From Schmidtea nova (lineage: Eukaryota): a stretch of DNA of 64,000 bases. The position numbers were made by a program, and so were the translations under genes. The stretch's first letter is position 1. Each line of letters starts with the position of its first letter. A model generated the notes under the pieces. The model made no database searches. It saw only the letters and a program-made list of their open reading frames with translations, and was not told the origin of the DNA. Positions 2,200 to 24,288 of this stretch are shown here, one piece after another. The stretch covers positions 561,968,001 through 562,032,000 of the forward strand of contig CM097882.1 of assembly GCA_044892505.1 (NCBI GenBank), given 5' to 3'.

Positions 2200-3090
2200 A
2201 TTTTGGACTTTTTTTCAACCATATTTTGGTGGGTTGGCTTATGTACTAAAGACATTTAGTCATAATAAACAAAATCACAAATTACAAAATGATGAAATGT
2301 CAATGGAAAAGAAAATTTGGCCCTCCATTTCAAATTTATAAAAATCTTTGAAATAATTGGCTCCTAGGATGGAACGGTTGTTGCAATTACAATTTTGTGT
2401 GCTAAACGCACTGGCGGACATGGGAACCAATCAATTTTATGAAGAAAACGATTTATAATGCTAAAAGAGATTTTTAATGTCTTAAAACTAACTGAATTGG
2501 CTGTAAAATAACTGACTAAGAAGTCTTCAAATCTTCTGACCTGTGAGAATGCGTATTCAAATTACTATTCAATATTCTTGCTAAACAAGAACCCAAGTTA
2601 AGTGAAATGATGCTTGAAGCTCTCCAAAAACGATAAAATAAGCGGCAAAACCAGGATTTCGTTGTTGAAATGCTAACAAAATTCAAACATGGTACAAAGT
2701 GAAGATAACTTCAGTAGCTCGTCTAAAGCAGCGATTGTCAATTGAGCTAAAAATATTATCAGAGAAATTTTTCCAATGAAATGAAACTGTAGCACGATGA
2801 ATCATTTGAAGATGAGGAAATTGAAAATAACCCGAACAATCTAGCGCCACAAATGCGGAAATCAATATCATCAGTAACTCTACTTCAATCCAAGAAAGCA
2901 AATCCATTTTTACAGATGAAAAAAAGCATTGAAGGCATGGAGCAACTAGTATCCGCAGGCCTATTTTGACAAGACTGGACAACGGATTAAAAACTATTCA
3001 ACCAACATCAACGGCAAGCGAAAAAAAAGTTTTCAGTAGCTGGAAACTTTTCAACAAAGCTTCCAAACTTTATGAAAATTCTAATGTGAA
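2200..3090 (+). mobile_element. Decayed hAT transposase remnant
   Basis: Broken frames give TELAVK*LTKKSSNLLTCEN (resembling the hAT at 42.2-43.3 kb) and TSTASEK-VFSVAGNFSTKL (hAT C-terminal dimerisation motif); boundaries approximate. Confidence 0.6.
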
Positions 3091-3605
3091 CGTATTAATA
3101 TTTTTAAAATATTATTTTTTGAAAAATTGATTTGTATGATTGACGATTAAGGTATAAAATATAGAAACCGAAACAAAAATGAAACGATGAAAGAAACTTA
3201 AATAAAAGGTAATTGAACTTGATACTTTAATGATAAAAAATAACAAGATATGCAATGGATTTAAAAATTGTTATGAAAAATATGAAAGAGCAGAAAATAC
3301 CATTTAGTCACAAAATAAAAATGATTGAACTTCAATTCTATGTCGTATTTACTTGTAAATCAACAATTATCGTTTGTTGTATGAATACACGTATATTTTT
3401 GATAAATTTTCACATGTTTGCCAAATTTTTACGATTTAATCAACTTTTAAAAAATACATATGAAAACCGTCCAAACCCGGTTTAAATACGACTTTGAATT
3501 TTTCTGAATTCTCTAGTTCGTTTGATTCATCGATAAAATATTTTAAATTTTTATTTAATAAATACTTAAACAAACATGAGAACGAATTAATTAAAGTAAA
3601 ACGCC

Positions 3606-3669
3606 ATTTATACAACATACGAACTATTTATTTCGACAGACTCCCTGCCATCTTCAGGTATCCATAAAT
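3606..3669 (-). ncRNA. Degenerate type-I hammerhead ribozyme motif at the Penelope 3' end
   Basis: Minus strand: ATTTATGGATAC-CTGAAGA-T-GGCAG(GGAGT)CTGTC-GAAA-TAAATAGTTC-GTATGTTGTATAAAT; core boxes, stem II and stem I pair, stem III is poorly paired. Confidence 0.55.
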
Positions 3670-5330
3670 CTATGCTAAATTCAAGTTAAAGAAACAATTT
3701 ATAAAATATAATTAGATAAAGATTTTAATTTTTTTTAATTTTTTAAATATTATTTTAAAATATAAAATTTAATTTATTAAGAATCAAACCACAAATTAAT
3801 TTAAAAATAATTAAATATTAAAAATTTTATTTAAAATTTTAAAAATTATTTTTAAAAAAGATATTTTTAAAAAATTTTATTTATTATATTTCACCAAAGC
3901 TAATTTCATCATTCAATTTAATTAATTCAATTTCATTTCATTTCATCCTTTAATTTAATTAATACAACAAAACGCACATATTAACACGCAAACTATTTAA
4001 AAACATTCAAAATACACTTGTTCACAGCATTCTGCACATTAATTTTAGGATTTAAAGATCTTATCAACAACGCATCACATATAATGCGTTCATAATGATT
4101 ATTAAGATTTTTTGATAAAATTTTAAAATCAATCCTGCCAACAATTTCTGTTACAGATTTTAGTATGATCAATAATATTGGACACTCCCTTTAGTCGATC
4201 ATTTTCAAGAACTCAAGTACAGAGATGGCGGGCAGTATCTCCAATGAATGTGGCATTACAACCATTACATGTAAATTGATAAACGAGATCTGAAAAAAAT
4301 TCAACCGGAGTTTGCGACTTATTAACAAACATACTACTCACTTTGCACGAATTGGAGATAATCCTAAAGTTTAGACAGCTCAATTGCTTTCATATCTTCT
4401 TTTTATGCTCTTTAAACCCCTCCGAATACGGCAATACCATCGTGAATTTAGGATTTTCATGTTTGATAGATCCTATTCTGCTATTCATTCCATCATCCAA
4501 ATTATCAGTATTATTGTATTAACCCTTATAAGGATCCTTAGGATTATATTTACGTTTATCCACCGTTTCTTTCATCATCATCATTTATTTAATACATCTA
4601 TTTAAACCAAACTCATTTTCGTTTTAGATTTTAAAATTTTGAAGTATTTCGAAAAATTCTATAATATTCATTTATACCATAAGCTCCCAACGGGGCGGTA
4701 CACCCACCGCTGGACAGAAAATAGATCTACGAGGCTTTTTTCGTCTAAGGCAAATTTACGGGTCGTTCAGGACTACCTTCCGCTATCCTGAGCAATATTC
4801 GCAAAAACACACTGCAAAATTTGATCTATACTAAAAATCTTCGAACGCATGTTTCAATAAGTAGTTCTAATGTCTTTTAAGCAAAATCAGTCTATATTAA
4901 AAAGGTATTGATATATCAAGAATTTTAACTTCAAAGACAAATTCCAGTAGTACATCAAGCTTTATGGGCTGCATCAAAAACTCTTTTTCAATGCATTTGC
5001 CATCAACATATTTTGCCGAAAGAGAATTTAGCGGAGTCAGTAATTTACTACAAAGAAAAGAAACAGATTGTCAATAGTGGAACGCGGAAATTTAAAATTT
5101 CTGATGACAAATATAGTACCAAATATCGACAGATGAGTGTTATAACATCTAACGTAGCCCTCTCATAAGTAGTACAGTTATCAAGTTCAATTCAATACCT
5201 CTTTCGACAATTATACGAGCTTATTAGGACACTTCGTGAAGAATAGCTCAATTGTATAATGTCTAGAAAACAACAACTACTAACCACTGATTTGGATTAA
5301 ATATGGGTAATTGATTTCGATTGTTTCCGG
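3606..5330 (-). mobile_element. Decayed Penelope-like retroelement (RT plus GIY-YIG endonuclease)
   Basis: Minus strand gives SDLVYQFTCNGCNATFIGDTARHLCT (GIY-YIG motif) and KNLNNHYERIICDALLIRSLNPKINVQ (typical Penelope C-terminus) at about 4030-4300, RT-like fragments to about 5300, and a hammerhead-like motif downstream. Confidence 0.75.
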
Positions 5331-8195
5331 GCTTTGACTTTATTCTTTAATCAATATTCTTTGGCCTTTGAAACTTCTCGTCTGCTTGGCTTCCTTTGTC
5401 TTTGCAACACAATTTTTATCTCAGCTACTGATTCAATCAATAAGTTTCCTTTTGTGTATCAAATTTCTCCTTTCGCATTTCAAACTCGTTTCGTATTGTA
5501 TACGTCAATTTTTAATTTACCTCTGGTTCAGGTTTCAATCTTTTTCTTTGTCAATTTCAAATTCTCCACTAAATCTTGTCTACCACAATTTTTCTTACTC
5601 CCACAATTTCTGTCTACAATTCTTAAATGTTCTGTCTAAATTTTCTCTAAAATTTTCTCTAAAATTCTGTCTAAACATCTGCCTGCTTCTGCTGTACCTC
5701 TCCTTTTATATATCGTCAAATTTTATGGCACTAAAGATAATTTTGTTTTTTGCATTTTAATTCCCGGCCATCTCGTGTTTTTCCCCAATTCCTGTTTTAT
5801 CTATGACAGCTGTCTAGATGATTTTGGATTTCCCTTTTTTACTTTTGAGGCCGACTTTTATCCGCACTCCTGTTATCTGACAAGTTGTCAGGATTTTATT
5901 TTCTTACTTGTTTTTGTTTACGTTTTGAAAATTCCTTTCTCGTTTTTGTACTTATTAATTAGGAATGACCTTTGTTTTTTATTTCTTGTTTGATCCCTTT
6001 TGTTTGTTCCCAACTTCTCATCTTTCATTTCTTTTTATTTCCGTTTCCTTTTTCATGTTCCCATTGGCCACCTTCTTTGTCATGACGATTTTCCCCAGGT
6101 AATTTTATTTGTTTATTTATAAATTTGTTATTTAGATATCCTCAACAGTAAGAAAATTTTATTTTATTGGCTTGGCAGCCATAATATGTGAATTTTTGTA
6201 AATAAAAAGTTGGTATACTTAACCCATTATTTTTGCTGAATATTGGGATCCTAAACAAGTATTTTAATATTTTATGAATTTAGTATAATGGTCAGGGAGA
6301 TTTTTTCAGCTAATAACTCAAACTATATTTGTTATCGCTGATATTATACGCTTCCTGTCAGACTTGCATATTTCCCGTGCGAATTTGACCGACTGACGTC
6401 ACTTTCGAAATGTGACAGACCAAAGTAAACTTGTCAACAAAATAAAATATTTCAAAAAATAGTATTGTTGGGTTTTAATATTCGAGTCGGTACTCTCTGA
6501 CTCCTCGTGTCCCATTAATCGTAAATAACAAAAATAAACTCCCCAACGTATATTGAATTACAAAATATATCTTTCGACACAAATAATCAATAACTAAGTT
6601 TTAATGAGTTTGACCGATTCTCTGCTCGGTATTGATACTTTGTCAATTTGGTATAATAATGTTCCCCTTTTTTAGTCAATGCTTCTTTGATTCACCTCTT
6701 TTCTTTATTTATTAGATTCGCTTTTAATTCTCTTTTCGTTTTCGTCAGTATCTACTGATTCTATCTTTTCTTTTTCCCTCACTTCCTATTTTCTACTTTT
6801 CCTCCTTTTTTAGTCCAATTCCTTCGTGTCCCTAGCTGAGGCAAAATGCCAATTTGTTCTGATTTTCACCTTCCTTTTATACTCTTCCAAATCTGGATGA
6901 CAAATGGGTTTTGCTGAGCCAATCTCTCTTCCGATATTCAGCTCCACATCTCTGCCTCGGCTGTCATCCGGAATGGCCCGACCAATTAAAATAATTAATA
7001 GCCTGCCTTGGACTTCTCTACACATATTATCTCTTCTTGACCTAATCCCATTAATTATTGTGACCAGATAATGGGCCTAAATATTCCTTCTGTTTACTTT
7101 TCTCTTTGTTTACCCAGCTCGAGATTTCTTTCTCTTTGCTAATTAATTAATTAATTAATTCCTTTCCTTTTCTTGTTTTTAACTCCTAAGTACCTTTTCG
7201 CACCCTTCTTGACACTTTCTGAAAATTCCGTTATCACCATGTAATTCCTCGTTACTTGTTCCCCCCACGACCAATTTTCCAGATTTCAATTCGAACATTT
7301 AAATCTTTTATCGATTTTTCACAATTCACATTTTTGTGCTTTTCCCCATAATGATACACTTTCTGACGCTTTTGTTCTCTTTTTATTTCTTTACACTATC
7401 AATTCTATACCTGACTCGATTTTCACATCTCTCCTTCATTTTGTTATAAATATAATTTTATTTTGAATTTTATTAATTTATTTTATTACTTCAACAGTAT
7501 TCATCTATTAATTGATAAAAAATAGTATAAATATTTTTTTCGCCTTAAATACAACCTCAAATTTTTCATTTTTACCAATTTCGGGATAATTTACCCTGGT
7601 TCCTTGACCACTGTCTTAGAACTGCAAATAAAAAATTGATCCAATAATATTAATATTAATTGTTGTAAGACTAGATCGAAAAATCTTTTTTTTATTATTA
7701 TTTCATACACAAGTGACAAAGGCTGTGCTAAAACATCATCTTGTCCTTATAAACAAAATTTTGTTTGACCTAGTTTTAAAAAGATTAATATGAAAATTAT
7801 TGAAATTTAAAAAAAGATATTTGATATTTTATTCTAACCTAATGTATTAAAATATCAAAATAATTTCATTGCTGCAGAAATGAGTCAGGGAAATAGTGGG
7901 AAACAACTTATTCAAACATAAATTGAATCAACAATATATCTCGTGAAAAAAATTCCATTTGTCATGTGCAAATTTACAAAATATTTGTTAAAGGATAATG
8001 AAAAATACTTTTTTTGACATACTTGTTTTGTTTAAACGAAGACTGCCAAATACGACTTAACTCGTAATTAACATATCTGTATCAGTTAATGTGTTAACTT
8101 AAATTTTTTGTGAAAATTGAATTTAAAGATTCTCACTTAAAATTGCGATTTATTTTATTTTCGTTTCATTTCAAAATAGAGATAAATATATTTAA

Positions 8196-9581: not shown

Positions 9582-9587
9582 CTAATG
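9582..9587 (+). repeat. Left 6-bp target-site duplication CTAATG
   Basis: Abuts the AGT terminus; identical hexamer at 22682-22687. Confidence 0.9.
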
Positions 9588-10123
9588 AGTAGGTAGATGT
9601 GTCCGGTCTGGATCCGTATCAGTTATCGCGCGTTTTTTGGCGCCATTTTTAAAGTTTGATTTGTTTAAATGTATGGAATTTTTTATTATTATTTTTATTT
9701 TATTATTAAATTTTTTTTTTTAATTATTTTTTTTTTATTAATTAATTTTTTTTAATTAGTTATTTATATTTATTTTTTTTTAACTTATATTTATTAATAT
9801 TTTTTTTTATTTAGTTCTTTTTTTTTGTTAGTATTATTTATTGTTGTTATTATAATTTTTGAACCACTTCAATGATAAACGTTCAATGAAAACATTCATA
9901 AAAATAATATAAACATATAACAAAATGAGACGATTATACACAACATAAAATTACATAGTCAAATACGATAAATATTAAACTATTATTATTATTAATATTA
10001 CTATTATTTCTATGACATAACCACAGTTTCTAAAAACTATTACCCAAATTAAAAAACAGACTGAAACTAATCTGTACAATATATAACTAAATAAATGAAA
10101 AAACAAAGTTTTTCAACAAAATT

Positions 10124-13100
10124 TTATTTAAATAAAACTGTTTCTTCTTCAGTTTGACCTTGGAATTGTTGATCTGGATTGATTCTGGGTTCGGTATGTT
10201 GAAATATAACCAAGTCACCTCCCATAAAATGGCCATATGCCAAGCTTTTATTTTTCGCAACCCATTTCCTTTTATCATCTGCGTTTGTCAGTGCAGTCTT
10301 TTCATTTTTAATAGTAAAAAGTTGGTGATTTTTACTTGTGATTCTGGTTTGAGGAACAGAAAATATTTGGTTATTATTAAAACAGTCCAGGTACGACTGA
10401 TGCTTTATGTCAGTACCCGCTAATGTTGCCCCTTTAGCTTTATTAGTTTCCTCGTCACCTAAAAGACTATAACATTTAGGTCTAAGAAACACCCACTCCT
10501 CGTATTTAAGCCCTTTATTCTCGTCTTTGAACTTGCCAATGACAGAATCAAGGTTCCTACTATATAATGGGTGATTCGGATCATAATTAGAAGTGTCAAG
10601 TAAGTTATCTCTTATCATGGCCGGTAAAAGAATATCAAGCTTACAATTTCTAATCTCAAGAAAAAACGAATCGGTGTCACCAGCTACGATGTTAATTTCG
10701 CAGTTGAATTCGTTACGATATTTTTGTAACTCTTCATACTGCAGCTGGTACATTCTAAGTTTAGATAGATCCAGTACAGTTTGACCAATGTAGCTGGGTC
10801 TATCCAAACACACCGATTCCTGATTCAGCAAGACGGCAACCAAATCATCGTCAATTTCGAAAGTCCTTTTAAAAGTTGGCTTAGAAGTATATGTAATCAG
10901 CCTAGAAGCCGAATTACATAATCTTAAATTTATGCGCTTTTTAAGATTCTCTACGGTTTTACCGTAGAGACTATTATTTAATAATTTAAAATAATTTTTA
11001 CCCAGAGCATTACTTGATTCTGCTCTAAGTCTGGTATTGGTATCGATATAATCCTTAAAAATGCATGCTTGTTTAAATTTAATTGCCCTATGGACATGAG
11101 TTATTTTTACTCCAAGAGAAAGAAAAAGTTTGAGAAGTCTCCAATGAAGAACATAGTTCTTCTTGGGATAATGCGTAAGCATCAACTTCTCAACCTTTGA
11201 GCCAGGTGGACACATCTTTTCAGCGGCAACTGGCAAATCATCCAGCTTGTCGTGAATCGAATCAGGAATTTCTAAATAGACTTCTAATGTAAATCCAAAT
11301 GTTAATACTTCTAAATCAGCAGATTCACAGTAATAAATAATTTTATTTAATTTTTCCCTATCAGTTACCCATTTAAATTCTTTATAAGGTAGTTTTTGGC
11401 TTAAGGCCCACCCATATAAATTATTTATATCTATATAAAGAAGCTCAGTGTCGTCGGAGGATACTACATGGTGTTTGTTAACAAATGTTAACCCACCACG
11501 GATCCCCCCTTCGAAAAAATTATACATCTCCATATCTTGAAGCAACTCGATAGGAGATTTCAAAGTCATCAAAGCTGAATTCCATGACATGCCTGGAATT
11601 CCCAAGAAATTAAGAGGCTCAAGTCGGTTATGTGCAATGGATTTTGCCCTAAATTGCTGAAAAAAGTCGGCAAGTAAGAAAACATCCAATTTCAGGTATA
11701 ACATCATATAATCAAACAATGTTTCACAATTAAATTCATCCCATATTTGTTGAGCTTTTTCATACTCGTCGATTTTAACTCCTTCCCAAATCGGTGGGAA
11801 CTCGTATGTATTTTGTAAAACCTCTAAAGAAGTTGCAAAATTATATGGGAATATGCCTTTGGATGTAATAATAGTCCCTATAAATTCGGATGAAGTAAGA
11901 GGAAAATCTGTTAAAGTCTTTACAGCATCGTTTAAGCTACAGCTTACAAATTGGCAAGAATCGATAAATTTAATAGTTAAACTATCGACTCTTGCATATA
12001 AAGTCAAAAACTTTTCACTTGTAGTAGGAATACAACTTATATCCCATTTATCGAATTTATTTAAACCATACTTGAGGATATGATGCAAATCATATCCGCG
12101 TAAATTATGAAATATTACTGGCATGATGAATCTTATTTGCCGAGAAAAATTACATTTAGCGCAAGCCGCACCCAAGTATTTACCTGTATAATGGTCATGA
12201 TCTTTAACCGGATTTTTCAAAGGTTTATTACACAAATAACAAATTATAGAACTACGAAATGATCTTATTTGTGCAGGGGAAAGATATTCCATTTTCTTTT
12301 TGGAATTATTTATAAAGTAAGGTAAAACTAGTTTTTCTCCTATATCATTGATTTCGGTCAAAAACTCTTCTACACAGTTAAGACCATAAAAGCTTTTATA
12401 CGATTTTTCGCCAGTAAAGTTATTAATAAGCAACAAGCCAGCAGAAATAGGCAAGTGACGTTGAAAATACTTATCGTCCTTCGGTAAAACAGCCTCAAAA
12501 TCGGCATATACAACAAAAGGAGGGGTAACAATCTTTGACCAATCTTTAAATTCCAAGTTCTTATCCGAAGGCAAAGTATACAAAGTTGTACCTAACTGGT
12601 TTTTTGTGCATAAAGCCTGATGTTTCTCAAAAACTTCAGTCAATCTAAAACCATTCAAGCAACGCTCACACCAAATGCATCTTATCCTAACATTGGTAAC
12701 AGTAAGTGTGTCACAATTCAAAAGTCTATTAATATTAGTAACTCCTATATAATGAAAAGAGTCACTTTCCTCTAACAAAATCAAATTAATTGGAGTGCCA
12801 CCTACAACCTTTGACCTATGAATAATATCTACAAATGGATGTTTCATGACTTCATCCTCCTCATTAATATTATTTAGATCATACTCGTCATATGAAAGGA
12901 TATTTATAGCCAGTCCAGGGTTTTTCGCTTCAAATTTGGGGATATTACATACTTTCATTGGAAAATCAGAAGGATCAAACACAAGGTCTAAGGGATTATA
13001 ATTATAAGACTTACTTCTATTAGATTTCACATCCTTGTATTTTAAAATTGCCAAAATACTATATATAAAACACAAGTTATCTGTATTCTTTACATTGACA

Positions 13101-14501
13101 GTGCAATGTTTTGCATTTAATGATGGTGGAGTTGAACAAGAACCTTTACCGCTCAATCTACTTATTTGGGAATATTTTGTAAGTTTAAAGCTTATTTCTT
13201 TAATTTTATTTATTGACCAATTGCTGCCATTTTCGCAGACTTTAGTCATTTTTTCACTTAATAGAGCAATACCTTCATCTAAAAAGGTATCACTCATTGG
13301 TTTTGCAGAATTTGATATTATAAAAGATTGAAATTGCTTATTCTTTTCAAATTCTACATCAATGCAGAATTGAACTTTTACATACCCCATTTTGGAAATA
13401 ACTGAATTAAATTTATTTAATAAAGGTGAAGGAATAATTAATTTATTTAAATTTAAAGAATCCACATCCATTTTAACAATGGCATGGGATTTTTTCAAAT
13501 TATATTTAACCAAAGATTCAACAGAACCGCCATATTGGACAACATGCAAATTAGGAATAACTAAAACATCGTCATTTGATGAATGGACATCTTCATCATC
13601 AGATATTACATTTATTTTAGCCGGTTTAGGACAAACAATAACATTTCGTCGTTTACTTTTATTAATTAATGCGAAAAGACTTTTCTTAGTGCATGAGAAT
13701 TGATCTAAATGGAGATAATGTTGGAAATAAAAATCAATGTAATTTATATGTTGGGCGCTCTTACATGTGGGACATAAATAGAAGGTGACTTGATTATTTA
13801 TAAGACGATAGTATCGCTCCATTAACTTGTGGCAGTCGTTATGATTTGATGACTTACAATAATTCGGATAAAATTTACCTTAATATGAAATATCTTTAAA
13901 TTTATCAAAATATCATTAAAATAAATTAATAAAAAATATGAATTATTAGAAAATAAATATGAAACTTAAGATAAATATGATTTAAATATAATAATTACTA
14001 AAATAATTTAAATTTAATATAAAAATTATTACAAAATAATATTAAAGGAATTTGTTTAAATTAACTGTTTACGTAAAGTAAAGATTATTTAAATTATTAC
14101 AAAATATTACCAAAAATATATATTTACAAATATTTTACTATATTTATTTACTAAATTAATTAAAATAATTATCAAAATATAATTAAAATTAATCAATACT
14201 TACATTGAACATTCAATACCACATCAGGTATAACTCCATTATTCATAATATTCTCATTATCAACAATCTCAGCTTGTACGGTAGTTTGTTCAGTCATATT
14301 TACATCACCTAAAGTAAAAATTAAATAATATACTAATTTAATGATTAAATACCATTTTCTTCCGCATTTTCTAACATCGATTTCCCAATTGAATTATTGA
14401 TATTACCTAAATTAATACTAAATGATAATAAATTAAAAAATAAATTTACCGTTTTCTTTCCCACTTGGGTTTTCGTTCATAAAACTTGTTATCATGTTCA
14501 T
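10124..14501 (-). CDS. polB: Protein-primed family-B DNA polymerase, left copy; predicted exons 14501-14450, 14406-14353, 14308-14204, 13878-10124 (1321 aa; 1232 aa from the first ATG of the last exon)
   Basis: ExoI YADFEA, ExoII HNLRGYD, ExoIII YLKLD, PolA DINNLYG, PolB KLLNNSLYGK, PolC GDTDS, KCY; mirror image of the right copy. Confidence 0.93.
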
Positions 14502-14550
14502 TTTTAATGTTTATTATTTGTTAAAGTGAATAATGAATGAAAAAGGATTG

Positions 14551-14636
14551 TTTATATATCAAAGTTATTACACACACATAACCTTTGACCAATAAAAATT
14601 GAGTAAGGGGTAGGAAATTTATTCTTATTAGCCAAT
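14551..14636 (-). promoter_or_regulatory. Mirror copy of the polB promoter in the left arm
   Basis: Reverse complement of 17633-17718. Confidence 0.6.
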
Positions 14637-15039
14637 CAGAATCGAGTAAGAGGCAGTAAAGGTATTATTATCATCAAATAGAGAAATGATAGAGAATTAT
14701 GACTAATCATATATTACGTTGCAGTATTTTAAAAAAACTAGAAAAGTTATTTCAACAAATTATAATACACATCAAAGTTATAAAATATTTCAATGAATTG
14801 CATGCATGTCATATGATTAAAATATATTAGACTAAATATTTCAGAAAATTACGTCTAAATTATATTACATTTCAATAATTACGTCAGTTATAAAAAATAT
14901 TTTAATTAATTTTGATAAAATACATTAGAATTGTCAATAACACACACAAAACCTTTATAATTTTCATTAGTATAGAAAATTAAATTATATCTACACATGA
15001 TTACAATAAATATTCGATAAATCTATGCTAAATAGTATT

Positions 15040-15718
15040 ACAAAACACGTGTGCATCACAAACATATCAATATACTTAATTTTGAATCAAGCCATTTTAT
15101 AGATATTTAAATTTTATTTATATGTAATTACAATGAAAACTCACTAAAGTTATTTTAAATAACTAAAACTTACAAAATTAATTACAAAACACGTGTGTAA
15201 CACGAAAAACGACAACATTTACATTTTGAATCAAGCCATTTTATAGGAAATTAAATTTTATATATACTTTATTACAATGAAAAGTCAATAAATTTATTTT
15301 ATATACATGAAAAACGCAAAATTAATTACAAAACACGTGTGTAACACCAAAAACGTCAACTTTTAGATTTTGAATCAAGCCATTTTATAGCAATTTAAAT
15401 TTTATCTATACTTTATTACAATGAAAAGTCAATAAATTTATTTTATATACACGAAAAATGCAAAATTAATTACAAAACACGTGTGTAATACAAACACACT
15501 AACAAAATAATTTTCTAATCAAGCCATTTTATAGGAAATTAAATTTTACTTATACTTTATTACAATGAAAACTCAATAAATTTATTTTATATACACAAAA
15601 AATGCAAAATTAATTACAAAACACGTGTGTATTACAAAATACGACATCTTTCAGATTTCTAATAAAGCCATTTTGTAGACATTTAAATTTTATACATATA
15701 ATATTACAATGAAAACTC
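15040..15718. repeat. 144-bp tandem repeat array, left (about 5 units)
   Basis: CACGTG at 15046, 15190, 15334, 15478, 15622; GCCATTTT at 15091, 15235, 15379, 15523, 15667. Confidence 0.95.
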
Positions 15719-16140
15719 TGCCGCCCCCCATGTGTGAACTCATATATTTTTTTATTAAATTTAAAATAAAATTTCATATTTAAAAAAAAATTAAAACAAA
15801 AAAGTCATATGATTAAAACAAATAGTCCATTTAATTTAAACAAAAATTCACTTAATTTAAACAAAATTCACTTAATTTAAACAAAAAATTCACTCAATTT
15901 AAACAAATATATGAAATTACGTAATTATATATAAAATTACATAATTATCGGGCTTTATTAAGCACACTTGATTATGTAATGGTTACGTAATCATGTGTGC
16001 TACATAAATACCCGAGCGATTACGTAATATACACACATGGGGGTAGTGGTTCAGTGCGCTCATAGCCTCCTACTACAAGACTTTAAACGCCTTTTTCGAG
16101 TCAATAAACCGGCCGATCGATTTTTTAGTGAAACAATAGA
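15719..16140. other. Unique central segment with nested inverted and direct repeats (candidate origin, hairpin end or resolution site)
   Basis: CCCCCATGTGTG (15725-15736) / CACACATGGGGG (16032-16043); 18-bp stem 15962-15979/15983-16000 with 2 mismatches and a 3-nt loop; about 3.7 copies of a 20-22-bp repeat at 15831-15910. Function is inferred. Confidence 0.6.
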
Positions 16141-17230
16141 TAGACAGAATTTTATTGTCTACAAAATGGCTGAATTAAAAATTCAAAATGTTGTGTATAT
16201 TGTTGTGCACACGTGTTTTGTCATTAAATTTGTATATTTCACCTAAATAAAATAACTTTTTTGAGTTTTCATTCAAATATTATATAGATAAAATTTAATT
16301 GTCTACAAAATGGCTTTATTAGAATTCTGAAATTTGTCGTATTTTGTGATGCACACGTGTTTTATTTTGAATTTTCAAATTTTTAACAATATAAAGTAAC
16401 TTTATGTATTTTTCATTGTAATAAAGTATAAGTAAAATTTAATTTCCTATAAAATGGCTTGATAAGAAAATTAGTTTGTTGGTGTGTTTGTAATGCACTC
16501 GTGTTTTGTAATTAATTTTACATTTTTCATGTATATAAAATAACTTTTTTGAGTTTTCCTTGTAATATTATATGTATAAAATTTAAATGTCTACAAAATG
16601 GCTTTATTAGAAATCTGAAAGATGTCGTATTTTGTAATACACACGTGTTTTGTAATTAATTTTGCATTTTTTGTGTATATAAAATAAATTTATTGAGTTT
16701 TCATTGTAATAAAGTATAAGTAAAATTTAATTTCCTATAAAATGGCTTGATTAGAAAATTATTTTGTTAGTGTGTTTGTATTACACACGTGTTTTGTAAT
16801 TAATTTTGCATTTTTCGTGTATATAAAATAAATTTATTGACTTTTCATTGTAATAAAGTATAGATAAAATTTAAATTGCTATAAAATGGCTTGATTCAAA
16901 ATCTAAAAGTTGACGTTTTTGGTGTTACACACGTGTTTTGTAATTAATTTTGCGTTTTTCATGTATATAAAATAAATTTATTGACTTTTCATTGTAATAA
17001 AGTATATATAAAATTTAATTTCCTATAAAATGGCTTGATTCAAAATGTAAATGTTGTCGTTTTTCGTGTTACACACGTGTTTTGTAATTAATTTTGTAAG
17101 TTTTAGTTATTTAAAATAACTTTAGTGAGTTTTCATTGTAATTACATATAAATAAAATTTAAATATCTATAAAATGGCTTGATTCAAAATTAAGTATATT
17201 GATATTTTTGTGATGCACACGTGTTTTGTA
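16140..17230. repeat. 144-bp tandem repeat array, right (about 8 units, inverted relative to left)
   Basis: CACGTG at 16210, 16354, (16498 CTCGTG), 16642, 16786, 16930, 17074, 17218. Confidence 0.95.
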
Positions 17231-17632
17231 ATACTATTTAGCATAGATTTATCGAATATTTATTGTAATCATGTGTAGATATAATTTAATTTTCTATACT
17301 AATGAAAATTATAAAGGTTTTGTGTGTGTTATTGACAATTCTAATGTATTTTATCAAAATTAATTAAAATATTTTTTATAACTGACGTAATTATTGAAAT
17401 GTAATATAATTTAGACGTAATTTTCTGAAATATTTAGTCTAATATATTTTAATCATATGACATGCATGCAATTCATTGAAATATTTTATAACTTTGATGT
17501 GTATTATAATTTGTTGAAATAACTTTTCTAGTTTTTTTAAAATACTGCAACGTAATATATGATTAGTCATAATTCTCTATCATTTCTCTATTTGATGATA
17601 ATAATACCTTTACTGCCTCTTACTCGATTCTG

Positions 17633-17718
17633 ATTGGCTAATAAGAATAAATTTCCTACCCCTTACTCAATTTTTATTGGTCAAAGGTTATGTGTGTGTA
17701 ATAACTTTGATATATAAA
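17633..17718 (+). promoter_or_regulatory. Candidate Pol II promoter of right polB (two reversed CCAAT boxes plus TATA)
   Basis: ATTGG at 17633-17637 and 17676-17680, TATATAAA at 17711-17718, predicted ATG at 17768. Confidence 0.6.
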
Positions 17719-17767
17719 CAATCCTTTTTCATTCATTATTCACTTTAACAAATAATAAACATTAAAA

Positions 17768-20700
17768 ATGAACATGATAACAAGTTTTATGAACGAAAAC
17801 CCAAGTGGGAAAGAAAACGGTAAATTTATTTTTTAATTTATTATCATTTAGTATTAATTTAGGTAATATCAATAATTCAATTGGGAAATCGATGTTAGAA
17901 AATGCGGAAGAAAATGGTATTTAATCATTAAATTAGTATATTATTTAATTTTTACTTTAGGTGATGTAAATATGACTGAACAAACTACCGTACAAGCTGA
18001 GATTGTTGATAATGAGAATATTATGAATAATGGAGTTATACCTGATGTGGTATTGAATGTTCAATGTAAGTATTGATTAATTTTAATTATATTTTGATAA
18101 TTATTTTAATTAATTTAGTAAATAAATATAGTAAAATATTTGTAAATATATATTTTTGGTAATATTTTGTAATAATTTAAATAATCTTTACTTTACGTAA
18201 ACAGTTAATTTAAACAAATTCCTTTAATATTATTTTGTAATAATTTTTATATTAAATTTAAATTATTTTAGTAATTATTATATTTAAATCATATTTATCT
18301 TAAGTTTCATATTTATTTTCTAATAATTCATATTTTTTATTAATTTATTTTAATGATATTTTGATAAATTTAAAGATATTTCATATTAAGGTAAATTTTA
18401 TGCGAATTATTGTAAGTCATCAAATCATAACGACTGCCACAAGTTAATGGAGCGATACTATCGTCTTATAAATAATCAAGTCACCTTCTATTTATGTCCC
18501 ACATGTAAGAGCGCCCAACATATAAATTACATTGATTTTTATTTCCAACATTATCTCCATTTAGATCAATTCTCATGCACTAAGAAAAGTCTTTTCGCAT
18601 TAATTAATAAAAGTAAACGACGAAATGTTATTGTTTGTCCTAAACCGGCTAAAATAAATGTAATATCTGATGATGAAGATGTCCATTCATCAAATGACGA
18701 TGTTTTAGTTATTCCTAATTTGCATGTTGTCCAATATGGCGGTTCTGTTGAATCTTTGGTTAAATATAATTTGAAAAAATCCCATGCCATTGTTAAAATG
18801 GATGTGGATTCTTTAAATTTAAATAAATTAATTATTCCTTCACCTTTATTAAATAAATTTAATTCAGTTATTTCCAAAATGGGGTATGTAAAAGTTCAAT
18901 TCTGCATTGATGTAGAATTTGAAAAGAATAAGCAATTTCAATCTTTTATAATATCAAATTCTGCAAAACCAATGAGTGATACCTTTTTAGATGAAGGTAT
19001 TGCTCTATTAAGTGAAAAAATGACTAAAGTCTGCGAAAATGGCAGCAATTGGTCAATAAATAAAATTAAAGAAATAAGCTTTAAACTTACAAAATATTCC
19101 CAAATAAGTAGATTGAGCGGTAAAGGTTCTTGTTCAACTCCACCATCATTAAATGCAAAACATTGCACTGTCAATGTAAAGAATACAGATAACTTGTGTT
19201 TTATATATAGTATTTTGGCAATTTTAAAATACAAGGATGTGAAATCTAATAGAAGTAAGTCTTATAATTATAATCCCTTAGACCTTGTGTTTGATCCTTC
19301 TGATTTTCCAATGAAAGTATGTAATATCCCCAAATTTGAAGCGAAAAACCCTGGACTGGCTATAAATATCCTTTCATATGACGAGTATGATCTAAATAAT
19401 ATTAATGAGGAGGATGAAGTCATGAAACATCCATTTGTAGATATTATTCATAGGTCAAAGGTTGTAGGTGGCACTCCAATTAATTTGATTTTGTTAGAGG
19501 AAAGTGACTCTTTTCATTATATAGGAGTTACTAATATTAATAGACTTTTGAATTGTGACACACTTACTGTTACCAATGTTAGGATAAGATGCATTTGGTG
19601 CGAGCGTTGCTTGAATGGTTTTAGATTGACTGAAGTTTTTGAGAAACATCAGGCTTTATGCACAAAAAACCAGTTAGGTACAACTTTGTATACTTTGCCT
19701 TCGGATAAGAACTTGGAATTTAAAGATTGGTCAAAGATTGTTACCCCTCCTTTTGTTGTATATGCCGATTTTGAGGCTGTTTTACCGAAGGACGATAAGT
19801 ATTTTCAACGTCACTTGCCTATTTCTGCTGGCTTGTTGCTTATTAATAACTTTACTGGCGAAAAATCGTATAAAAGCTTTTATGGTCTTAACTGTGTAGA
19901 AGAGTTTTTGACCGAAATCAATGATATAGGAGAAAAACTAGTTTTACCTTACTTTATAAATAATTCCAAAAAGAAAATGGAATATCTTTCCCCTGCACAA
20001 ATAAGATCATTTCGTAGTTCTATAATTTGTTATTTGTGTAATAAACCTTTGAAAAATCCGGTTAAAGATCATGACCATTATACAGGTAAATACTTGGGTG
20101 CGGCTTGCGCTAAATGTAATTTTTCTCGGCAAATAAGATTCATCATGCCAGTAATATTTCATAATTTACGCGGATATGATTTGCATCATATCCTCAAGTA
20201 TGGTTTAAATAAATTCGATAAATGGGATATAAGTTGTATTCCTACTACAAGTGAAAAGTTTTTGACTTTATATGCAAGAGTCGATAGTTTAACTATTAAA
20301 TTTATCGATTCTTGCCAATTTGTAAGCTGTAGCTTAAACGATGCTGTAAAGACTTTAACAGATTTTCCTCTTACTTCATCCGAATTTATAGGGACTATTA
20401 TTACATCCAAAGGCATATTCCCATATAATTTTGCAACTTCTTTAGAGGTTTTACAAAATACATACGAGTTCCCACCGATTTGGGAAGGAGTTAAAATCGA
20501 CGAGTATGAAAAAGCTCAACAAATATGGGATGAATTTAATTGTGAAACATTGTTTGATTATATGATGTTATACCTGAAATTGGATGTTTTCTTACTTGCC
20601 GACTTTTTTCAGCAATTTAGGGCAAAATCCATTGCACATAACCGACTTGAGCCTCTTAATTTCTTGGGAATTCCAGGCATGTCATGGAATTCAGCTTTGA

Positions 20701-22145
20701 TGACTTTGAAATCTCCTATCGAGTTGCTTCAAGATATGGAGATGTATAATTTTTTCGAAGGGGGGATCCGTGGTGGGTTAACATTTGTTAACAAACACCA
20801 TGTAGTATCCTCCGACGACACTGAGCTTCTTTATATAGATATAAATAATTTATATGGGTGGGCCTTAAGCCAAAAACTACCTTATAAAGAATTTAAATGG
20901 GTAACTGATAGGGAAAAATTAAATAAAATTATTTATTACTGTGAATCTGCTGATTTAGAAGTATTAACATTTGGATTTACATTAGAAGTCTATTTAGAAA
21001 TTCCTGATTCGATTCACGACAAGCTGGATGATTTGCCAGTTGCCGCTGAAAAGATGTGTCCACCTGGCTCAAAGGTTGAGAAGTTGATGCTTACGCATTA
21101 TCCCAAGAAGAACTATGTTCTTCATTGGAGACTTCTCAAACTTTTTCTTTCTCTTGGAGTAAAAATAACTCATGTCCATAGGGCAATTAAATTTAAACAA
21201 GCATGCATTTTTAAGGATTATATCGATACCAATACCAGACTTAGAGCAGAATCAAGTAATGCTCTGGGTAAAAATTATTTTAAATTATTAAATAATAGTC
21301 TCTACGGTAAAACCGTAGAGAATCTTAAAAAGCGCATAAATTTAAGATTATGTAATTCGGCTTCTAGGCTGATTACATATACTTCTAAGCCAACTTTTAA
21401 AAGGACTTTCGAAATTGACGATGATTTGGTTGCCGTCTTGCTGAATCAGGAATCGGTGTGTTTGGATAGACCCAGCTACATTGGTCAAACTGTACTGGAT
21501 CTATCTAAACTTAGAATGTACCAGCTGCAGTATGAAGAGTTACAAAAATATCGTAACGAATTCAACTGCGAAATTAACATCGTAGCTGGTGACACCGATT
21601 CGTTTTTTCTTGAGATTAGAAATTGTAAGCTTGATATTCTTTTACCGGCCATGATAAGAGATAACTTACTTGACACTTCTAATTATGATCCGAATCACCC
21701 ATTATATAGTAGGAACCTTGATTCTGTCATTGGCAAGTTCAAAGACGAGAATAAAGGGCTTAAATACGAGGAGTGGGTGTTTCTTAGACCTAAATGTTAT
21801 AGTCTTTTAGGTGACGAGGAAACTAATAAAGCTAAAGGGGCAACATTAGCGGGTACTGACATAAAGCATCAGTCGTACCTGGACTGTTTTAATAATAACC
21901 AAATATTTTCTGTTCCTCAAATCAGAATCACAAGTAAAAATCACCAACTTTTTACTATTAAAAATGAAAAGACTGCACTGACAAACGCAGATGATAAAAG
22001 GAAATGGGTTGCGAAAAATAAAAGCTTGGCATATGGCCATTTTATGGGAGGTGACTTGGTTATATTTCAACATACCGAACCCAGAATCAATCCAGATCAA
22101 CAATTCCAAGGTCAAACTGAAGAAGAAACAGTTTTATTTAAATAA
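17768..22145 (+). CDS. polB: Protein-primed family-B DNA polymerase, right copy; predicted exons 17768-17819, 17863-17916, 17961-18065, 18391-22145 (1321 aa)
   Basis: Same motifs in an uninterrupted 1232-aa ORF; three phase-1 GT-AG introns (43, 44, 325 nt) join upstream exons in frame (52+54+105+3755 = 3966 nt); AATAAA at 22141-22146 overlaps the stop. Polymerase identity is more certain than the 5' exon model. Confidence 0.93.
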
Positions 22146-22681
22146 AATTTTGTTGAAAAACTTTGTTTTTTCATTTATTTAGTTATATATTGTACAGATT
22201 GGTTTCAGTCTGTTTTTTAATTTGGGTAATAGTTTTTAGAAACTGTGGTTATGTCATAGAAATAATAGTAATATTAATAATAATAATAGTTTAATATTTA
22301 TCGTATTTGACTATGTAATTTTATGTTGTGTATAATCGTCTCATTTTGTTATATGTTTATATTATTTTTATGAATGTTTTCATTGAACGTTTATCATTGA
22401 AGTGGTTCAAAAATTATAATAACAACAATAAATAATACTAACAAAAAAAAAGAACTAAATAAAAAAAAATATTAATAAATATAAGTTAAAAAAAAATAAA
22501 TATAAATAACTAATTAAAAAAAATTAATTAATAAAAAAAAAATAATTAAAAAAAAAAATTTAATAATAAAATAAAAATAATAATAAAAAATTCCATACAT
22601 TTAAACAAATCAAACTTTAAAAATGGCGCCAAAAAACGCGCGATAACTGATACGGATCCAGACCGGACACATCTACCTACT

Positions 22682-22687
22682 CTAATG
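22682..22687 (+). repeat. Right 6-bp target-site duplication CTAATG
   Basis: Abuts the ACT terminus; identical to 9582-9587. Confidence 0.9.
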
Positions 22688-24288
22688 ACGTATACTAATG
22701 AAAATTTACAAAAATAAAATTCTTTGACAAGGAGGATATAAATACGTTTTCCATGATGTTGAATCCCCAGACGGTGGTTAGCAGGCCAAGAGCTTATTCA
22801 GTAACTTTTTTGAAAAGCCTACCTTCATATTATATTCTATAGTGTTTGGTACTAGATACCTGCGCTCTTTCGAACAATAAAGTGCTGTGGGGCTCTCACA
22901 GCCCTAAAAAATCAATCTTTTCACAAACTACGCAAGACCTACCGTCGCCATAAACCCAAGGTTTGGTTATAAGTTACATAAAGTTTTATGCCATTCATAT
23001 GTCAATTCGAAATGAAAATTCAATTTAAACTGTAAAATAAATTTATTGTATGAATATAGAAAATATTATAATTTTTAATGGACTTAATGGAAAACTTAAT
23101 GGAAAACGAAATTCTCGAAATGGGACTATTTAGAATGAGAAATAAAATTAAGTCGTTGTAAGAATAAATGTATTGGAAAAGAAATTACGGCAGAAATTCT
23201 GGGATCGTCAACACCAGTCACGGACTAACAAATAAACAAAATTTTTTTGGCCCCAATTTTCATTGTGTTTATTTTTTATTACTTTACAATAATAACCAAT
23301 TCACTTATACTAAACAAACTTCTTGCAAAACTTACAAAGACTATGAACATTTTTTAAGCAAATTAAAATGCTTACAAAAATGCTTACTGCCAAAGACTAT
23401 TTAAATATAAAGACGTAAAAAATTTTGAAGTAAAAATTTCGTTGGAATTTTCTGAAATCATAAAATATAATTTTATCAAAAATTTTTGTGTGCAGTTGAC
23501 CTTGAAAACTTTTTCCGAAAGAAAATTTGATGAATTAATTAATTTTTATTTTTTATTACATAATTTTGCGGACTCTCGGTTAAGATTCACTGATTTAAAC
23601 TATACACGTATTAAACCTAAAATAAAAAATAAATCACAACTGAATATTCTCGTGAATGACAACTAGGGAAATTCCCAACATTCAACTGCTAATCAGTTAT
23701 TCAGAACCGGTAGGATACGCAAACCGGCACAATTGATCAATATTTCACAATTTATTACAAAACTACACCCGTTAATTGATATACAAATCCTATTCATGTG
23801 TAACATAGAAATAGAATCCCAAAAAATTAACTTTCTGATCGGCCAACAAAGCACCGGATAAATCCCAACAGACTAATGAAAAACAAAATTCAAATTAGTC
23901 CACTTTTCTAAATCTCTGTTCGAATATTAATTTAAAAAACGACTGTGGTTAATTTCTGGGGGTTTCGTTTAATTTTTGCGGTCTCATTTATCTATATGAC
24001 AAACTTTGAAAAGTTGCTGCAGCTAGAATGGGAATTATCCTCATGGACAATCGGCTGCATTGGTAATCATCCGACTGGGACTTGTTAATTGGAAATTGTT
24101 AGTTGCACAGTTGTTACAGGCCCTTAATTATTTACAATCACTTGTCTTAATGAAAATTATCTCTGAATTTTCAATTGTCTTCGTAATATACATATATAAC
24201 TAAAGATTTGAAATTAAATTATTTTATTTTGCTCATATTTGATCTCTTTTTTTCTATTTAAAATATTTTCATTTTCCTTTTCAATATA

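What the first reader, a model, noticed from the sequence alone, without database searches (positions are those of the whole stretch)
9582..22687. 13.1-kb palindromic, polymerase-only Polinton-like element with 6.1-kb arms and a clean 6-bp TSD
Seen: a single insertion (CTAATG duplicated, AGT...ACT termini) made of two 6,131-bp inverted arms around an 832-bp spacer. Each arm has one intact pPolB gene, the two oriented divergently, and I see no other credible gene. Established: Polintons/Mavericks have 6-bp TSDs, 5'-AG termini, TIRs of hundreds of bp, one pPolB, a retroviral-type integrase, and usually an ATPase, protease and capsid genes. Here the 'TIR' is almost the whole element and contains the polymerase. 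Inference: either (a) a minimal self-replicating linear replicon of about 6.5 kb with one protein-primed end and one hairpin end, whose unfolded double-length form was integrated by a helper Polinton integrase, or (b) a Polinton derivative formed by template switching during strand-displacement replication. Either would be replication-competent but dependent on a helper for integration. I do not know of a description of this architecture.
Basis: partly seen in the sequence, partly recalled or inferred. Interest (0 to 1): 0.96.

Follow-up and report, generated by a model that had tools for sequence, protein, structure and literature searches.

The report
Palindromic polymerase-only Polinton derivative
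A 13.1-kb insertion in an AT-rich eukaryotic genome consists almost entirely of two mirror-image copies of the polymerase-bearing end of a Polinton/Maverick virus-like transposon, and may be a fossil of a replication or repair mishap that bears on how these elements copy themselves.

Summary
Window 9588-22681 is one 13,094-bp insertion with AGT...ACT ends and a perfect 6-bp duplication (CTAATG). It has two 6,131-bp inverted arms that differ by 6 substitutions and no indels, around an 832-bp centre. Each arm carries one intact 1,232-aa ORF reading outward.

The ORF is a protein-primed family B polymerase. Its polymerase part models confidently and matches phi29 polymerase far better than any other fold. 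Its closest relatives (50-62% identity) sit in ordinary Polintons with integrase, packaging ATPase and protease. None of those genes is in the element or elsewhere in the window.

New anatomy: the arm boundary lies inside inverted arrays of a 144-bp repeat. It is in register with the repeat (exactly 3 units from the array's inner end), and both arrays meet a 400-bp core in the same phase. This suggests a homology-guided exchange between inverted repeats.

My best reading is an inverted dimer of one genome end, made during strand-displacement replication and inserted by a helper integrase. Rearrangement after integration is not excluded.

No other example turned up among 115 related loci. Gene-bearing 2-kb TIRs in butterfly polintons are a partial precedent. 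I rate it a new variant of a known kind.

The parts
9582..9587 (.). Left copy of the 6-bp target-site duplication (CTAATG)
9588..22681 (.). Whole element, 13,094 bp, termini AGT...ACT
9588..15718 (.). Left arm (6,131 bp)
9588..9657 (.). Terminal 70 bp, relatively G+C-rich (44%); mirrored at 22612-22681. Presumed end-recognition sequence (inference)
9658..9860 (.). Subterminal low-complexity A/T tract (6% GC); mirrored at 22409-22611
10124..13822 (-). [quoted passage not shown] N-terminal conserved domain (about aa 1-430), exonuclease domain with a His-Me/EndoVII-like zinc insert, polymerase domain
13823..14660 (-). Putative promoter and leader of the polymerase gene: two CCAAT motifs, a TATA-like box, and three short coding-looking segments with GT/AG borders. 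Mirrored at 17609-18446 (+). Inferred, not verified
   Evidence: a comparable 5' mini-exon and intron lie upstream of the relative's ORF in L003, and another appears to in L001
15037..15718 (+). Left array of the 144-bp tandem repeat, 4.7 units, each with a CACGTG motif
15719..16118 (.). 400-bp non-palindromic core: 22-bp tandem repeats, three TTACGTAA palindromes, G+C-rich edges. No similarity to the 144-bp unit
16119..16550 (-). Three extra 144-bp units (exactly 432 bp), old and diverged (73-92% to other units), with no mirror partner on the left
16551..22681 (.). Right arm (6,131 bp), mirror of the left arm; includes array units at 16551-17232
18447..22145 (+). Second polymerase gene, intact, 1,232 aa, 1 residue different from the first
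22682..22687 (.). Right copy of the target-site duplication (CTAATG)

Best explanation
The element is a recently inserted, non-autonomous derivative of a Polinton/Maverick: an inverted dimer of the polymerase-bearing end of a parent element. Shown: the ends, the 6-bp duplication, the two intact polymerase genes, the absence of integrase, capsid, ATPase and protease genes, and an arm boundary that is in register with inverted 144-bp arrays. Inferred: in the parent, a 400-bp core upstream of the polymerase promoter was flanked by inverted arrays of the 144-bp repeat. During protein-primed, strand-displacing replication of a free linear genome, the growing strand, or two sister molecules, exchanged between these inverted arrays in register. 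That produced a molecule with the same polymerase-side end at both termini. Because both termini are valid integrase substrates, an integrase from a complete element in the same nucleus inserted it, making the 6-bp duplication. Since then the arms have acquired 6 substitutions. As it stands the element encodes only the polymerase, twice, each copy probably with its own promoter. It would depend on a complete element for integration and packaging.
For: Architecture and duplication. Polymerase identity: homologues carry PF03175; all 93 columns invariant in 38 relatives are shared by the window protein; the model has pLDDT 90 and its best fold match is phi29 polymerase at E 8e-21 and target TM-score 0.7, against 3e-10 for the best RNA-primed polymerase. 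Polinton origin: the seven closest relatives examined lie next to rve integrase and an A32-like ATPase (faint hit) (L001, L002, L005), a C48 protease (L004), or a gene block syntenic with L001 (L003, L116, L117; L116 also has a faint adenain-like hit). In L004 and L005 the polymerase is the last gene before the contig end or a gene-free stretch, as in the window. No other Polinton gene in the window. Junction: 16551-16119 = 432 bp = exactly 3 units. Both arrays meet the core in the same unit phase, and the core has no repeat similarity, so the array ends are sharp. One of the only 6 arm differences lies 9 bp from the arm boundary; the chance of that is about 1% (my calculation), and it is what an exchange just outside the apparent boundary would leave. 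Precedent: template switching by the phi29 polymerase yields subgenomic molecules from one genome end in vivo (Murthy et al. 1998, as described in PMC4974454). TIRs of related complete elements are only 270-550 bp, and the literature gives 100-1,500 bp (PMC10748475), so this one is a derived state.
Against: There is only one copy, and the same genome could not be searched: the window's proteins are not in the collections, and the terminal sequence is absent from the viral collection. No other polymerase-containing long inverted repeat was found in 115 related loci. No free replicating form of any Polinton has been demonstrated. The same anatomy would result from repair after integration. The in-register junction rests on one locus, with about a 3-5% chance of phase coincidence. 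The parent with inverted arrays is hypothetical.
Confidence: 0.5

Rival explanations
1. Rearrangement after integration. A complete Polinton was inserted normally. Later a break in its non-polymerase part was repaired using the polymerase part of the same or sister copy as an inverted template, with homology at the two TIRs and at the inverted 144-bp arrays. This replaced the other genes with a mirror copy of the polymerase end. No free palindromic replicon ever existed.
For: It explains the intact ends and duplication and the in-register junction equally well. Only one copy is known, and the architecture is not recurrent among 115 related loci. Long-TIR derivatives produced by faulty gap repair are well known for cut-and-paste transposons (established knowledge, e.g. 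Galileo/Foldback-type elements; PMC4168063 was listed but not read in detail).
Against: It needs two homology-guided invasions, one of them in arrays only 73-92% alike, and a break in one particular copy. It gives no reason for the survivor to be the polymerase side. None of this is decisive.
Confidence: 0.25
2. Two-molecule insertion. A retroviral-type integrase joined the polymerase-side ends of two separate, incomplete or broken linear genomes to one target (concerted integration does not require both ends to come from one molecule). Host end-joining then sealed the two inner broken ends at 15718|15719.
For: It accounts for the duplication, for identical ends, and for arms of unequal length with an asymmetric centre. 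It needs no inverted arrays in the parent. Hybrid-end insertions giving inverted duplications are known for P and Ac/Ds elements (established knowledge, from memory).
Against: It does not predict that the shorter arm stops exactly in phase with the inner end of the other arm's array, nor a difference 9 bp from the junction. Both could still be coincidence.
Confidence: 0.1
3. Assembly artefact: a normal element or a single arm was turned into a palindrome by chimeric reads or by the assembler.
For: Arms at 99.9% identity over 6.1 kb are hard to assemble, and the assembly has gaps or masked stretches elsewhere in the window (N runs). No reads are available here.
Against: The arms differ by 6 substitutions and no indels despite many long A/T runs. 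The centre is asymmetric with unique old repeat units. Both flanks are different single-copy host sequence with a perfect duplication. Fold-back read artefacts give symmetric centres and only one true flank.
Confidence: 0.07
4. One reading: a natural 6.5-kb mini-replicon with one protein-primed end and one hairpin end, inserted in its unfolded double-length form.
For: Half the element (about 6.5 kb) holds a terminus, a polymerase and a promoter. A 6.5-kb TIR-bounded polymerase-bearing element does exist among distant relatives (L111), though it has ordinary 272-bp TIRs and two more genes.
Against: The centre is 832 bp, asymmetric and not self-complementary. It has no telomere-resolvase-type site and no resolvase gene. 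No relative shows such an architecture.
Confidence: 0.04

Closest known systems
Polinton/Maverick elements (polintoviruses, adintovirus-like elements of animals)
   Same: 6-bp target duplication, 5'-AG...CT-3' ends, terminal inverted repeats, and a protein-primed PolB of the same clade as polymerases linked to rve integrase, A32-like ATPase and cysteine protease.
   Different: No integrase, capsid, ATPase or protease genes. The 'TIR' makes up 94% of the element and contains the polymerase, against 100-1,500 bp in the literature (PMC10748475) and 270-550 bp in related complete loci. There are two polymerase genes.
Butterfly polintons with ~2-kb gene-bearing TIRs (bioRxiv 10.1101/2025.02.07.637071)
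   Same: TIRs long enough to contain genes, so each insertion carries two copies of them.
   Different: There the duplicated genes are hexon and adenain and the rest of the element is complete. Here the duplicated gene is the polymerase, the arms are three times longer, and nothing else is left.
Subgenomic molecules of phage phi29 made by polymerase template switching (Murthy et al. 1998, described in PMC4974454)
   Same: A protein-primed, strand-displacing polymerase of the same fold. The molecules derive from one genome end through template switching. From memory, they are palindromic with terminal protein at both ends.
   Different: The phi29 molecules are free and transient. The window shows an integrated copy in a eukaryotic chromosome with a target duplication.
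Adenovirus incomplete-particle genomes and yeast killer-plasmid 'hairpin/palindromic' derivatives (Daniell 1976, listed in the references of PMC12090768; Kikuchi et al. 1985, from memory)
   Same: Defective genomes of protein-primed linear replicons built as large inverted duplications of one end. This content is recalled from memory and was not read here.
   Different: These are not integrated, and the adenovirus ones do not keep the polymerase gene. Membership cannot be tested with sequence alone.
Palindromic chromosomes from fusion of nearby inverted repeats by replication template exchange (yeast; from memory)
   Same: Exchange between closely spaced inverted repeats gives a palindrome whose centre is the spacer between the repeats. 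This is the geometry inferred.
   Different: A cellular replication fork rather than a terminal-protein-primed linear genome; a mechanistic analogy only.
Foldback/Galileo-type transposons with very long TIRs containing tandem repeats
   Same: Most of the element is inverted arms, with tandem repeats in the inner parts of the arms.
   Different: A different superfamily and duplication length, and those arms carry no polymerase. Here the ends, the duplication and the gene are Polinton-type.

Membership tests
Polinton/Maverick | [quoted passage not shown] | tested here: met
   Homologues carry PF03175; the window protein shares all 93 columns invariant in 38 relatives; best PDB fold match is phi29 polymerase, E 8e-21. 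A direct Pfam scan of the window protein did not reach PF03175.
Polinton/Maverick | Retroviral-type (rve) integrase encoded by the element | tested here: not met
   No tblastn hit with integrases of L001 or L002 anywhere in the window, and no ORF of sufficient size. Hence a derivative, not an autonomous member.
Polinton/Maverick | 6-bp target-site duplication and 5'-AG / CT-3' termini with TIRs | tested here: met
   CTAATG on both sides; AGTAGG... / ...CCTACT ends.
Polinton/Maverick | Morphogenetic module (major and minor capsid proteins, packaging ATPase, maturation protease) | tested here: not met
   No similarity to any of 34 proteins from L001-L004.
Polinton/Maverick | Polymerase groups with polymerases of complete Polintons | tested here: met
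   Closest relatives (50-62% identity) are encoded next to rve, an A32-like ATPase (faint hit), a C48 protease or a faint adenain-like hit. No formal tree was built.
Palindromic defective genomes of protein-primed replicons (phi29 subgenomic DNA, adenovirus incomplete-particle DNA, killer-plasmid derivatives) | Inverted duplication of one genome end, so both termini are the same end | tested here: met
   Arms 99.9% identical over 6,131 bp, each containing the same terminus and polymerase.
Palindromic defective genomes of protein-primed replicons | Junction explicable by a strand or template switch | tested here: inconclusive
   The junction is in register with inverted 144-bp arrays. That fits a switch but also fits repair after integration.
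Palindromic defective genomes of protein-primed replicons | Exists as a free linear molecule with terminal protein | not testable with these tools
   Only the integrated copy is visible.
Linear mitochondrial/cytoplasmic pPolB plasmids | Extrachromosomal, TIR-bounded, polymerase plus RNA polymerase, no target duplication | tested here: not met
   Integrated in TE-rich chromosomal DNA with a duplication. No second gene. The nearest relatives are Polintons.
Hairpin-telomere replicons | Self-complementary turn-around at the centre, with a resolvase site or gene | tested here: not met
   The centre is an asymmetric 832 bp and its core is not palindromic.

The most novel reading that the evidence does not exclude
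Polymerase-only palindromic mini-Polintons are not one-off accidents but a propagating class of satellite replicons. On this reading they keep their own protein-primed polymerase and both origins and rely on complete Polintons only for integration and packaging. That would make them a eukaryotic DNA counterpart of defective-interfering genomes that retains the replicase. This copy would then also be the first sequence-level trace that Polintons replicate as free linear genomes by strand displacement.
Probability: 0.15. Interest if true: 0.8.

Novelty: new variant of a known kind. Interest (0 to 1): 0.6.

Why it matters
How Polintons/Mavericks replicate has only been inferred from their gene content; no free replicating form has been demonstrated. 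A clean insertion built as an inverted dimer of one genome end is the kind of by-product that protein-primed, strand-displacing replication is known to make in phage phi29. If the palindrome formed before insertion, it is indirect evidence of two things. First, these elements pass through a free linear stage copied by their own polymerase. Second, their integrase can act in trans on any molecule with two valid ends. It would also show how gene-bearing long TIRs and non-autonomous derivatives arise in this group. If it formed after insertion, it is an instructive but ordinary example of inverted-repeat-guided repair inside a large transposon.

Tried and rejected
- Direct Pfam and PDB sequence searches with the window protein gave no polymerase call. 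A profile of 38 relatives gave only weak PDB hits: Hpy99I at 0.031 and phi29 polymerase at 0.34. The identification therefore rests on homologues and on the fold search.
- Finding the same genome or other copies failed. There was no exact protein on record, no hit above 62% identity, and no close relative or terminal 20-mer in the viral collection. The single metagenome scan returned only relatives at 57% identity or less. The host species stays unidentified: no tRNA or Rfam hit, and the host ORFs have no informative Pfam hit apart from a degraded retroelement.
- A screen of 115 related loci for a second inverted polymerase or for long inverted repeats found only L002. Its second copy is 50% identical at protein level with no DNA-level repeat, so it is not the same phenomenon.
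- I tested whether the core (15719-16118) is a decayed repeat unit or is self-complementary. It is neither. A 12-bp inverted repeat near its edges does not sit where a snap-back origin would require it (my reading).
- The idea that the left array lost three units by unequal exchange is not favoured. The last left unit is 99% identical to its mirror partner R5 and only 74% to the innermost right unit R8. It is not excluded if the exchange was at the extreme end of the unit.
- The N-terminal domain fold search gave no significant match (best E 0.017), so no function is claimed for it.
- Daniell 1976 could not be read.


Full report
**Observation.** The repeat finder reports inverted arms at 9587-15718 and 16551-22682 with 832 nt between them.

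- The ends read ...ACTAATG|AGTAGGTAG... on the left and ...CTACCTACT|CTAATGACG... on the right.
- The element is therefore 9588-22681 (13,094 bp), flanked by a perfect 6-bp duplication, CTAATG. The outermost matching base pair of the repeat is a chance extension into the duplication.
- A base-by-base comparison shows the 6,131-bp arms are not identical. They differ by 6 substitutions spread evenly from 481 to 6,123 bp from the terminus, with no indels.
- The terminal 28-mer occurs only at the two ends.
- No arm or flank sequence recurs elsewhere in the window.
- At 27% G+C, a 6/6 flank match at a fixed position has a chance of about 1 in 1,300 (my calculation).

The described structure is real at the stated coordinates.

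**Coding content.** Each arm has one long ORF: 10124-13822 on the minus strand and 18447-22145 on the plus strand. Both are 1,232 aa and read from the centre outward, ending 536 bp from the terminus. The products differ at one residue, and the second nucleotide difference inside the ORF is synonymous.

Pfam gives only a sub-threshold Endonuclease_7 hit, and PDB sequence search gives nothing. The polymerase identification rests on other evidence:

- 578 homologues were found, many with precomputed PF03175 (DNA_pol_B_2) and PF02945.
- In an alignment of 38 of them there are 93 invariant columns, all necessarily shared by the window protein, running from the exonuclease part to the C-terminal polymerase part.
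- A model of residues 421-1232 has mean pLDDT 90.4.
- Its nine best PDB matches are all phi29 DNA polymerase (E 8e-21 to 5e-18, target TM-score about 0.7). The best RNA-primed family B enzymes score about 3e-10.

So the gene is an intact protein-primed PolB. A zinc-binding His-Me/EndoVII-like insert inside the exonuclease domain is invariant in the family. The N-terminal 430 residues fold confidently (pLDDT 82) but match no solved fold.

**Origin.** The closest relatives (50-62% identity, metagenome assemblies) are encoded in ordinary Polinton/Maverick-type elements.

| Locus | Neighbouring genes |
|---|---|
| L001, L002, L005 | rve integrase and an A32-like ATPase (faint hit) on the same contig |
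| L004 | C48 protease just upstream |
| L003, L116, L117 | The same convergent gene block as L001; L116 also has a faint adenain-like hit |

L005 and L006 are chromosomal contigs with LTR retroelements, and L006 also has a piggyBac transposase. In L004 and L005 the polymerase is the last gene before the contig end or a gene-free stretch, as in the window.

Proteins from L001-L004 (34 in all) find nothing in the window except the two polymerase genes, even at E = 5. No ORF longer than 69 aa lies between the polymerase genes. The element is thus a polymerase-only derivative of a Polinton lineage. It fails the integrase and capsid criteria for autonomous membership.

**Region upstream of the polymerase.** On the coding strand, the 700 bp upstream of the start holds two CCAAT motifs, a TATA-like box, and three short open segments bordered by GT donors and AG acceptors. 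As I read them, these keep the frame into the polymerase start codon. A comparable 5' mini-exon plus short intron lies upstream of the called ORF in L003, and another appears to lie upstream in L001. I treat this as a probable promoter and leader. It is not verified by any expression data. Each arm therefore seems to hold a complete transcription unit.

**Centre and junction.** This is the most informative new finding.

- A 144-bp tandem repeat forms an array of 4.7 units at 15037-15718. An inverted array of about 7.7 units (8 BLAST matches, the outermost partial) lies at 16119-17232.
- The outer five right-hand units mirror the left array (99-100% identity).
- The three inner right-hand units (16119-16550) are old. 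They are 73-92% identical to the other units, so they long predate the 0.1% divergence between the arms.
- The distance from the arm boundary (16551) to the inner end of the right array (16119) is 432 bp, exactly three units. The boundary is therefore a normal unit-to-unit junction.
- Both arrays meet the 400-bp core (15719-16118) at the same unit position.
- The core has no detectable similarity to the unit in either orientation, so the array ends are sharp.
- A random breakpoint would be in phase within a few bases only about 3-5% of the time (my estimate).
- One of the six arm differences lies 9 bp from the boundary, with a chance of about 1% (my calculation). An exchange slightly outward of the apparent boundary would leave exactly that.

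The simplest reading is that the parent already had the core flanked by inverted 144-bp arrays, and that the palindrome arose by an in-register, homology-guided exchange between them. The core carries 22-bp repeats and three TTACGTAA palindromes, and each unit has a CACGTG motif. It looks regulatory, but I did not test that.

**Mechanism.** An exchange between nearby inverted repeats on a linear genome replicated from its ends gives two palindromic products, each an inverted dimer of one end. The window holds the polymerase-side product.

For phage phi29, whose polymerase has the same fold, template switching in vivo produces subgenomic molecules from one genome end (Murthy et al. 1998, as described in PMC4974454). 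From memory, similar inverted-dimer genomes occur in adenovirus incomplete particles and in yeast killer-plasmid derivatives. I could not read those papers here.

Because both ends of such a dimer are valid termini, an integrase supplied by a complete element could insert it with the usual 6-bp duplication. I rate this replicative origin at about 0.5. The rivals are:

- **Repair after integration** (about 0.25). A normally inserted complete element is repaired using the TIRs and the inverted arrays as homology. This gives the same product.
- **Two-molecule insertion** (about 0.1). Two broken genome ends are inserted together and then joined by host end-joining. This explains the asymmetry but not the phase.
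- **Misassembly** (about 0.07). It is unlikely given substitution-only differences, an asymmetric centre of unique old units, two different single-copy flanks and the duplication. It cannot be excluded without reads.
It is disfavoured by the asymmetric, non-self-complementary centre.

**Recurrence and novelty.** Among 115 loci encoding relatives, only L002 has polymerase matches on both strands. There the second copy is partial, 50% identical at protein level, and has no DNA-level inverted repeat.

Complete-looking relatives have TIRs of 270-550 bp. The literature gives 100-1,500 bp TIRs and 13-25 kb length for Polintons (PMC10748475). A 2026 preprint version reports butterfly polintons with about 2-kb TIRs that contain the hexon and adenain genes (10.1101/2025.02.07.637071), so gene-bearing TIRs are known. 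I found no description of a polymerase-only palindrome in which the arms make up 94% of the element.

I rate it a new variant of a known kind. Its interest is moderate to high because it may be a sequence fossil of the still-undemonstrated free replicative stage. It remains a single copy with an unresolved time of origin.

**Limits.**
- No reads, expression data or population data were available.
- No tree was built.
- The divergence of 6 in 6,131 sites indicates a recent origin, but I give no date because the host's mutation rate is unknown.

Noticed in passing
L002:3-2838: A second, partial polymerase gene (outer bounds L002:3-2276, minus strand; 50% identical to the full one at 2839-6315; truncated once at its 5' side and cut by the contig end) lies head-to-head with the complete polymerase. 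Between them are 32-bp tandem repeats (2281-2457) and a C10G10 palindrome. It loosely resembles the window's centre but has no DNA-level inverted repeat. It could be a nested insertion or an old exchange between two lineages.
   Followed up: partly
L001:12382-13431; L002:7583-8161: Related Polintons carry cellular-type genes: a Bcl-2 family gene and a TATA-box-binding protein gene in L001, and a TBP gene in L002 (unmarked Pfam hits).
   Followed up: no
L001:6945-9969; L002:11070-13141: Tandem paralogous genes of about 330-350 aa (three in L001, two in L002) lie next to the integrase, with recognisable DNA-level repeats at about 1-kb spacing. They have no Pfam hit.
   Followed up: no
L111:1-6543: A complete-looking 6.5-kb linear element from IMG/VR with 272-bp TIRs at both contig ends. 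It has a 1,115-aa polymerase ORF whose matched part is 28% identical to the window's, plus two convergent ORFs of 499 and 316 aa. It is a very small polymerase-bearing element.
   Followed up: partly
window 13823-14660 (mirror 17609-18446): CCAAT x2, a TATA-like box and three short coding-looking segments with GT/AG borders that keep frame into the polymerase start. This may be a spliced leader or N-terminal extension. A similar 5' mini-exon lies upstream of the relative's ORF in L003, and one appears to in L001.
   Followed up: partly
window 15037-17232: Each 144-bp unit contains a CACGTG motif. The 400-bp core has 5.5 copies of a 22-bp repeat and three TTACGTAA palindromes, plus a 12-bp inverted repeat near its edges (15726-15737 / 16035-16046). 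It looks like a regulatory region. TRF also finds a 288-bp higher-order period.
   Followed up: partly
window 10124-13822 (protein residues 1-430 and 506-560): The N-terminal 430 residues form a confidently folded domain with no PDB fold match. They have an invariant Cys251/His357 pair and a CCHC cluster (385, 388, 401, 405). A His-Me/EndoVII-like zinc insert within the exonuclease domain is invariant in all 38 aligned relatives.
   Followed up: partly
window 50615-51934: A degraded retroelement: a gag-like ORF (below the Pfam cut-off) and an RVT_1 fragment (E 9e-26). The window is otherwise poor in long ORFs.
   Followed up: no
window 22682-22701: The right flank repeats ACTAATG 12 bp after the duplication (CTAATGACGTATACTAATG). 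It is a local short repeat of the target region and does not change the 6-bp duplication call.
   Followed up: yes
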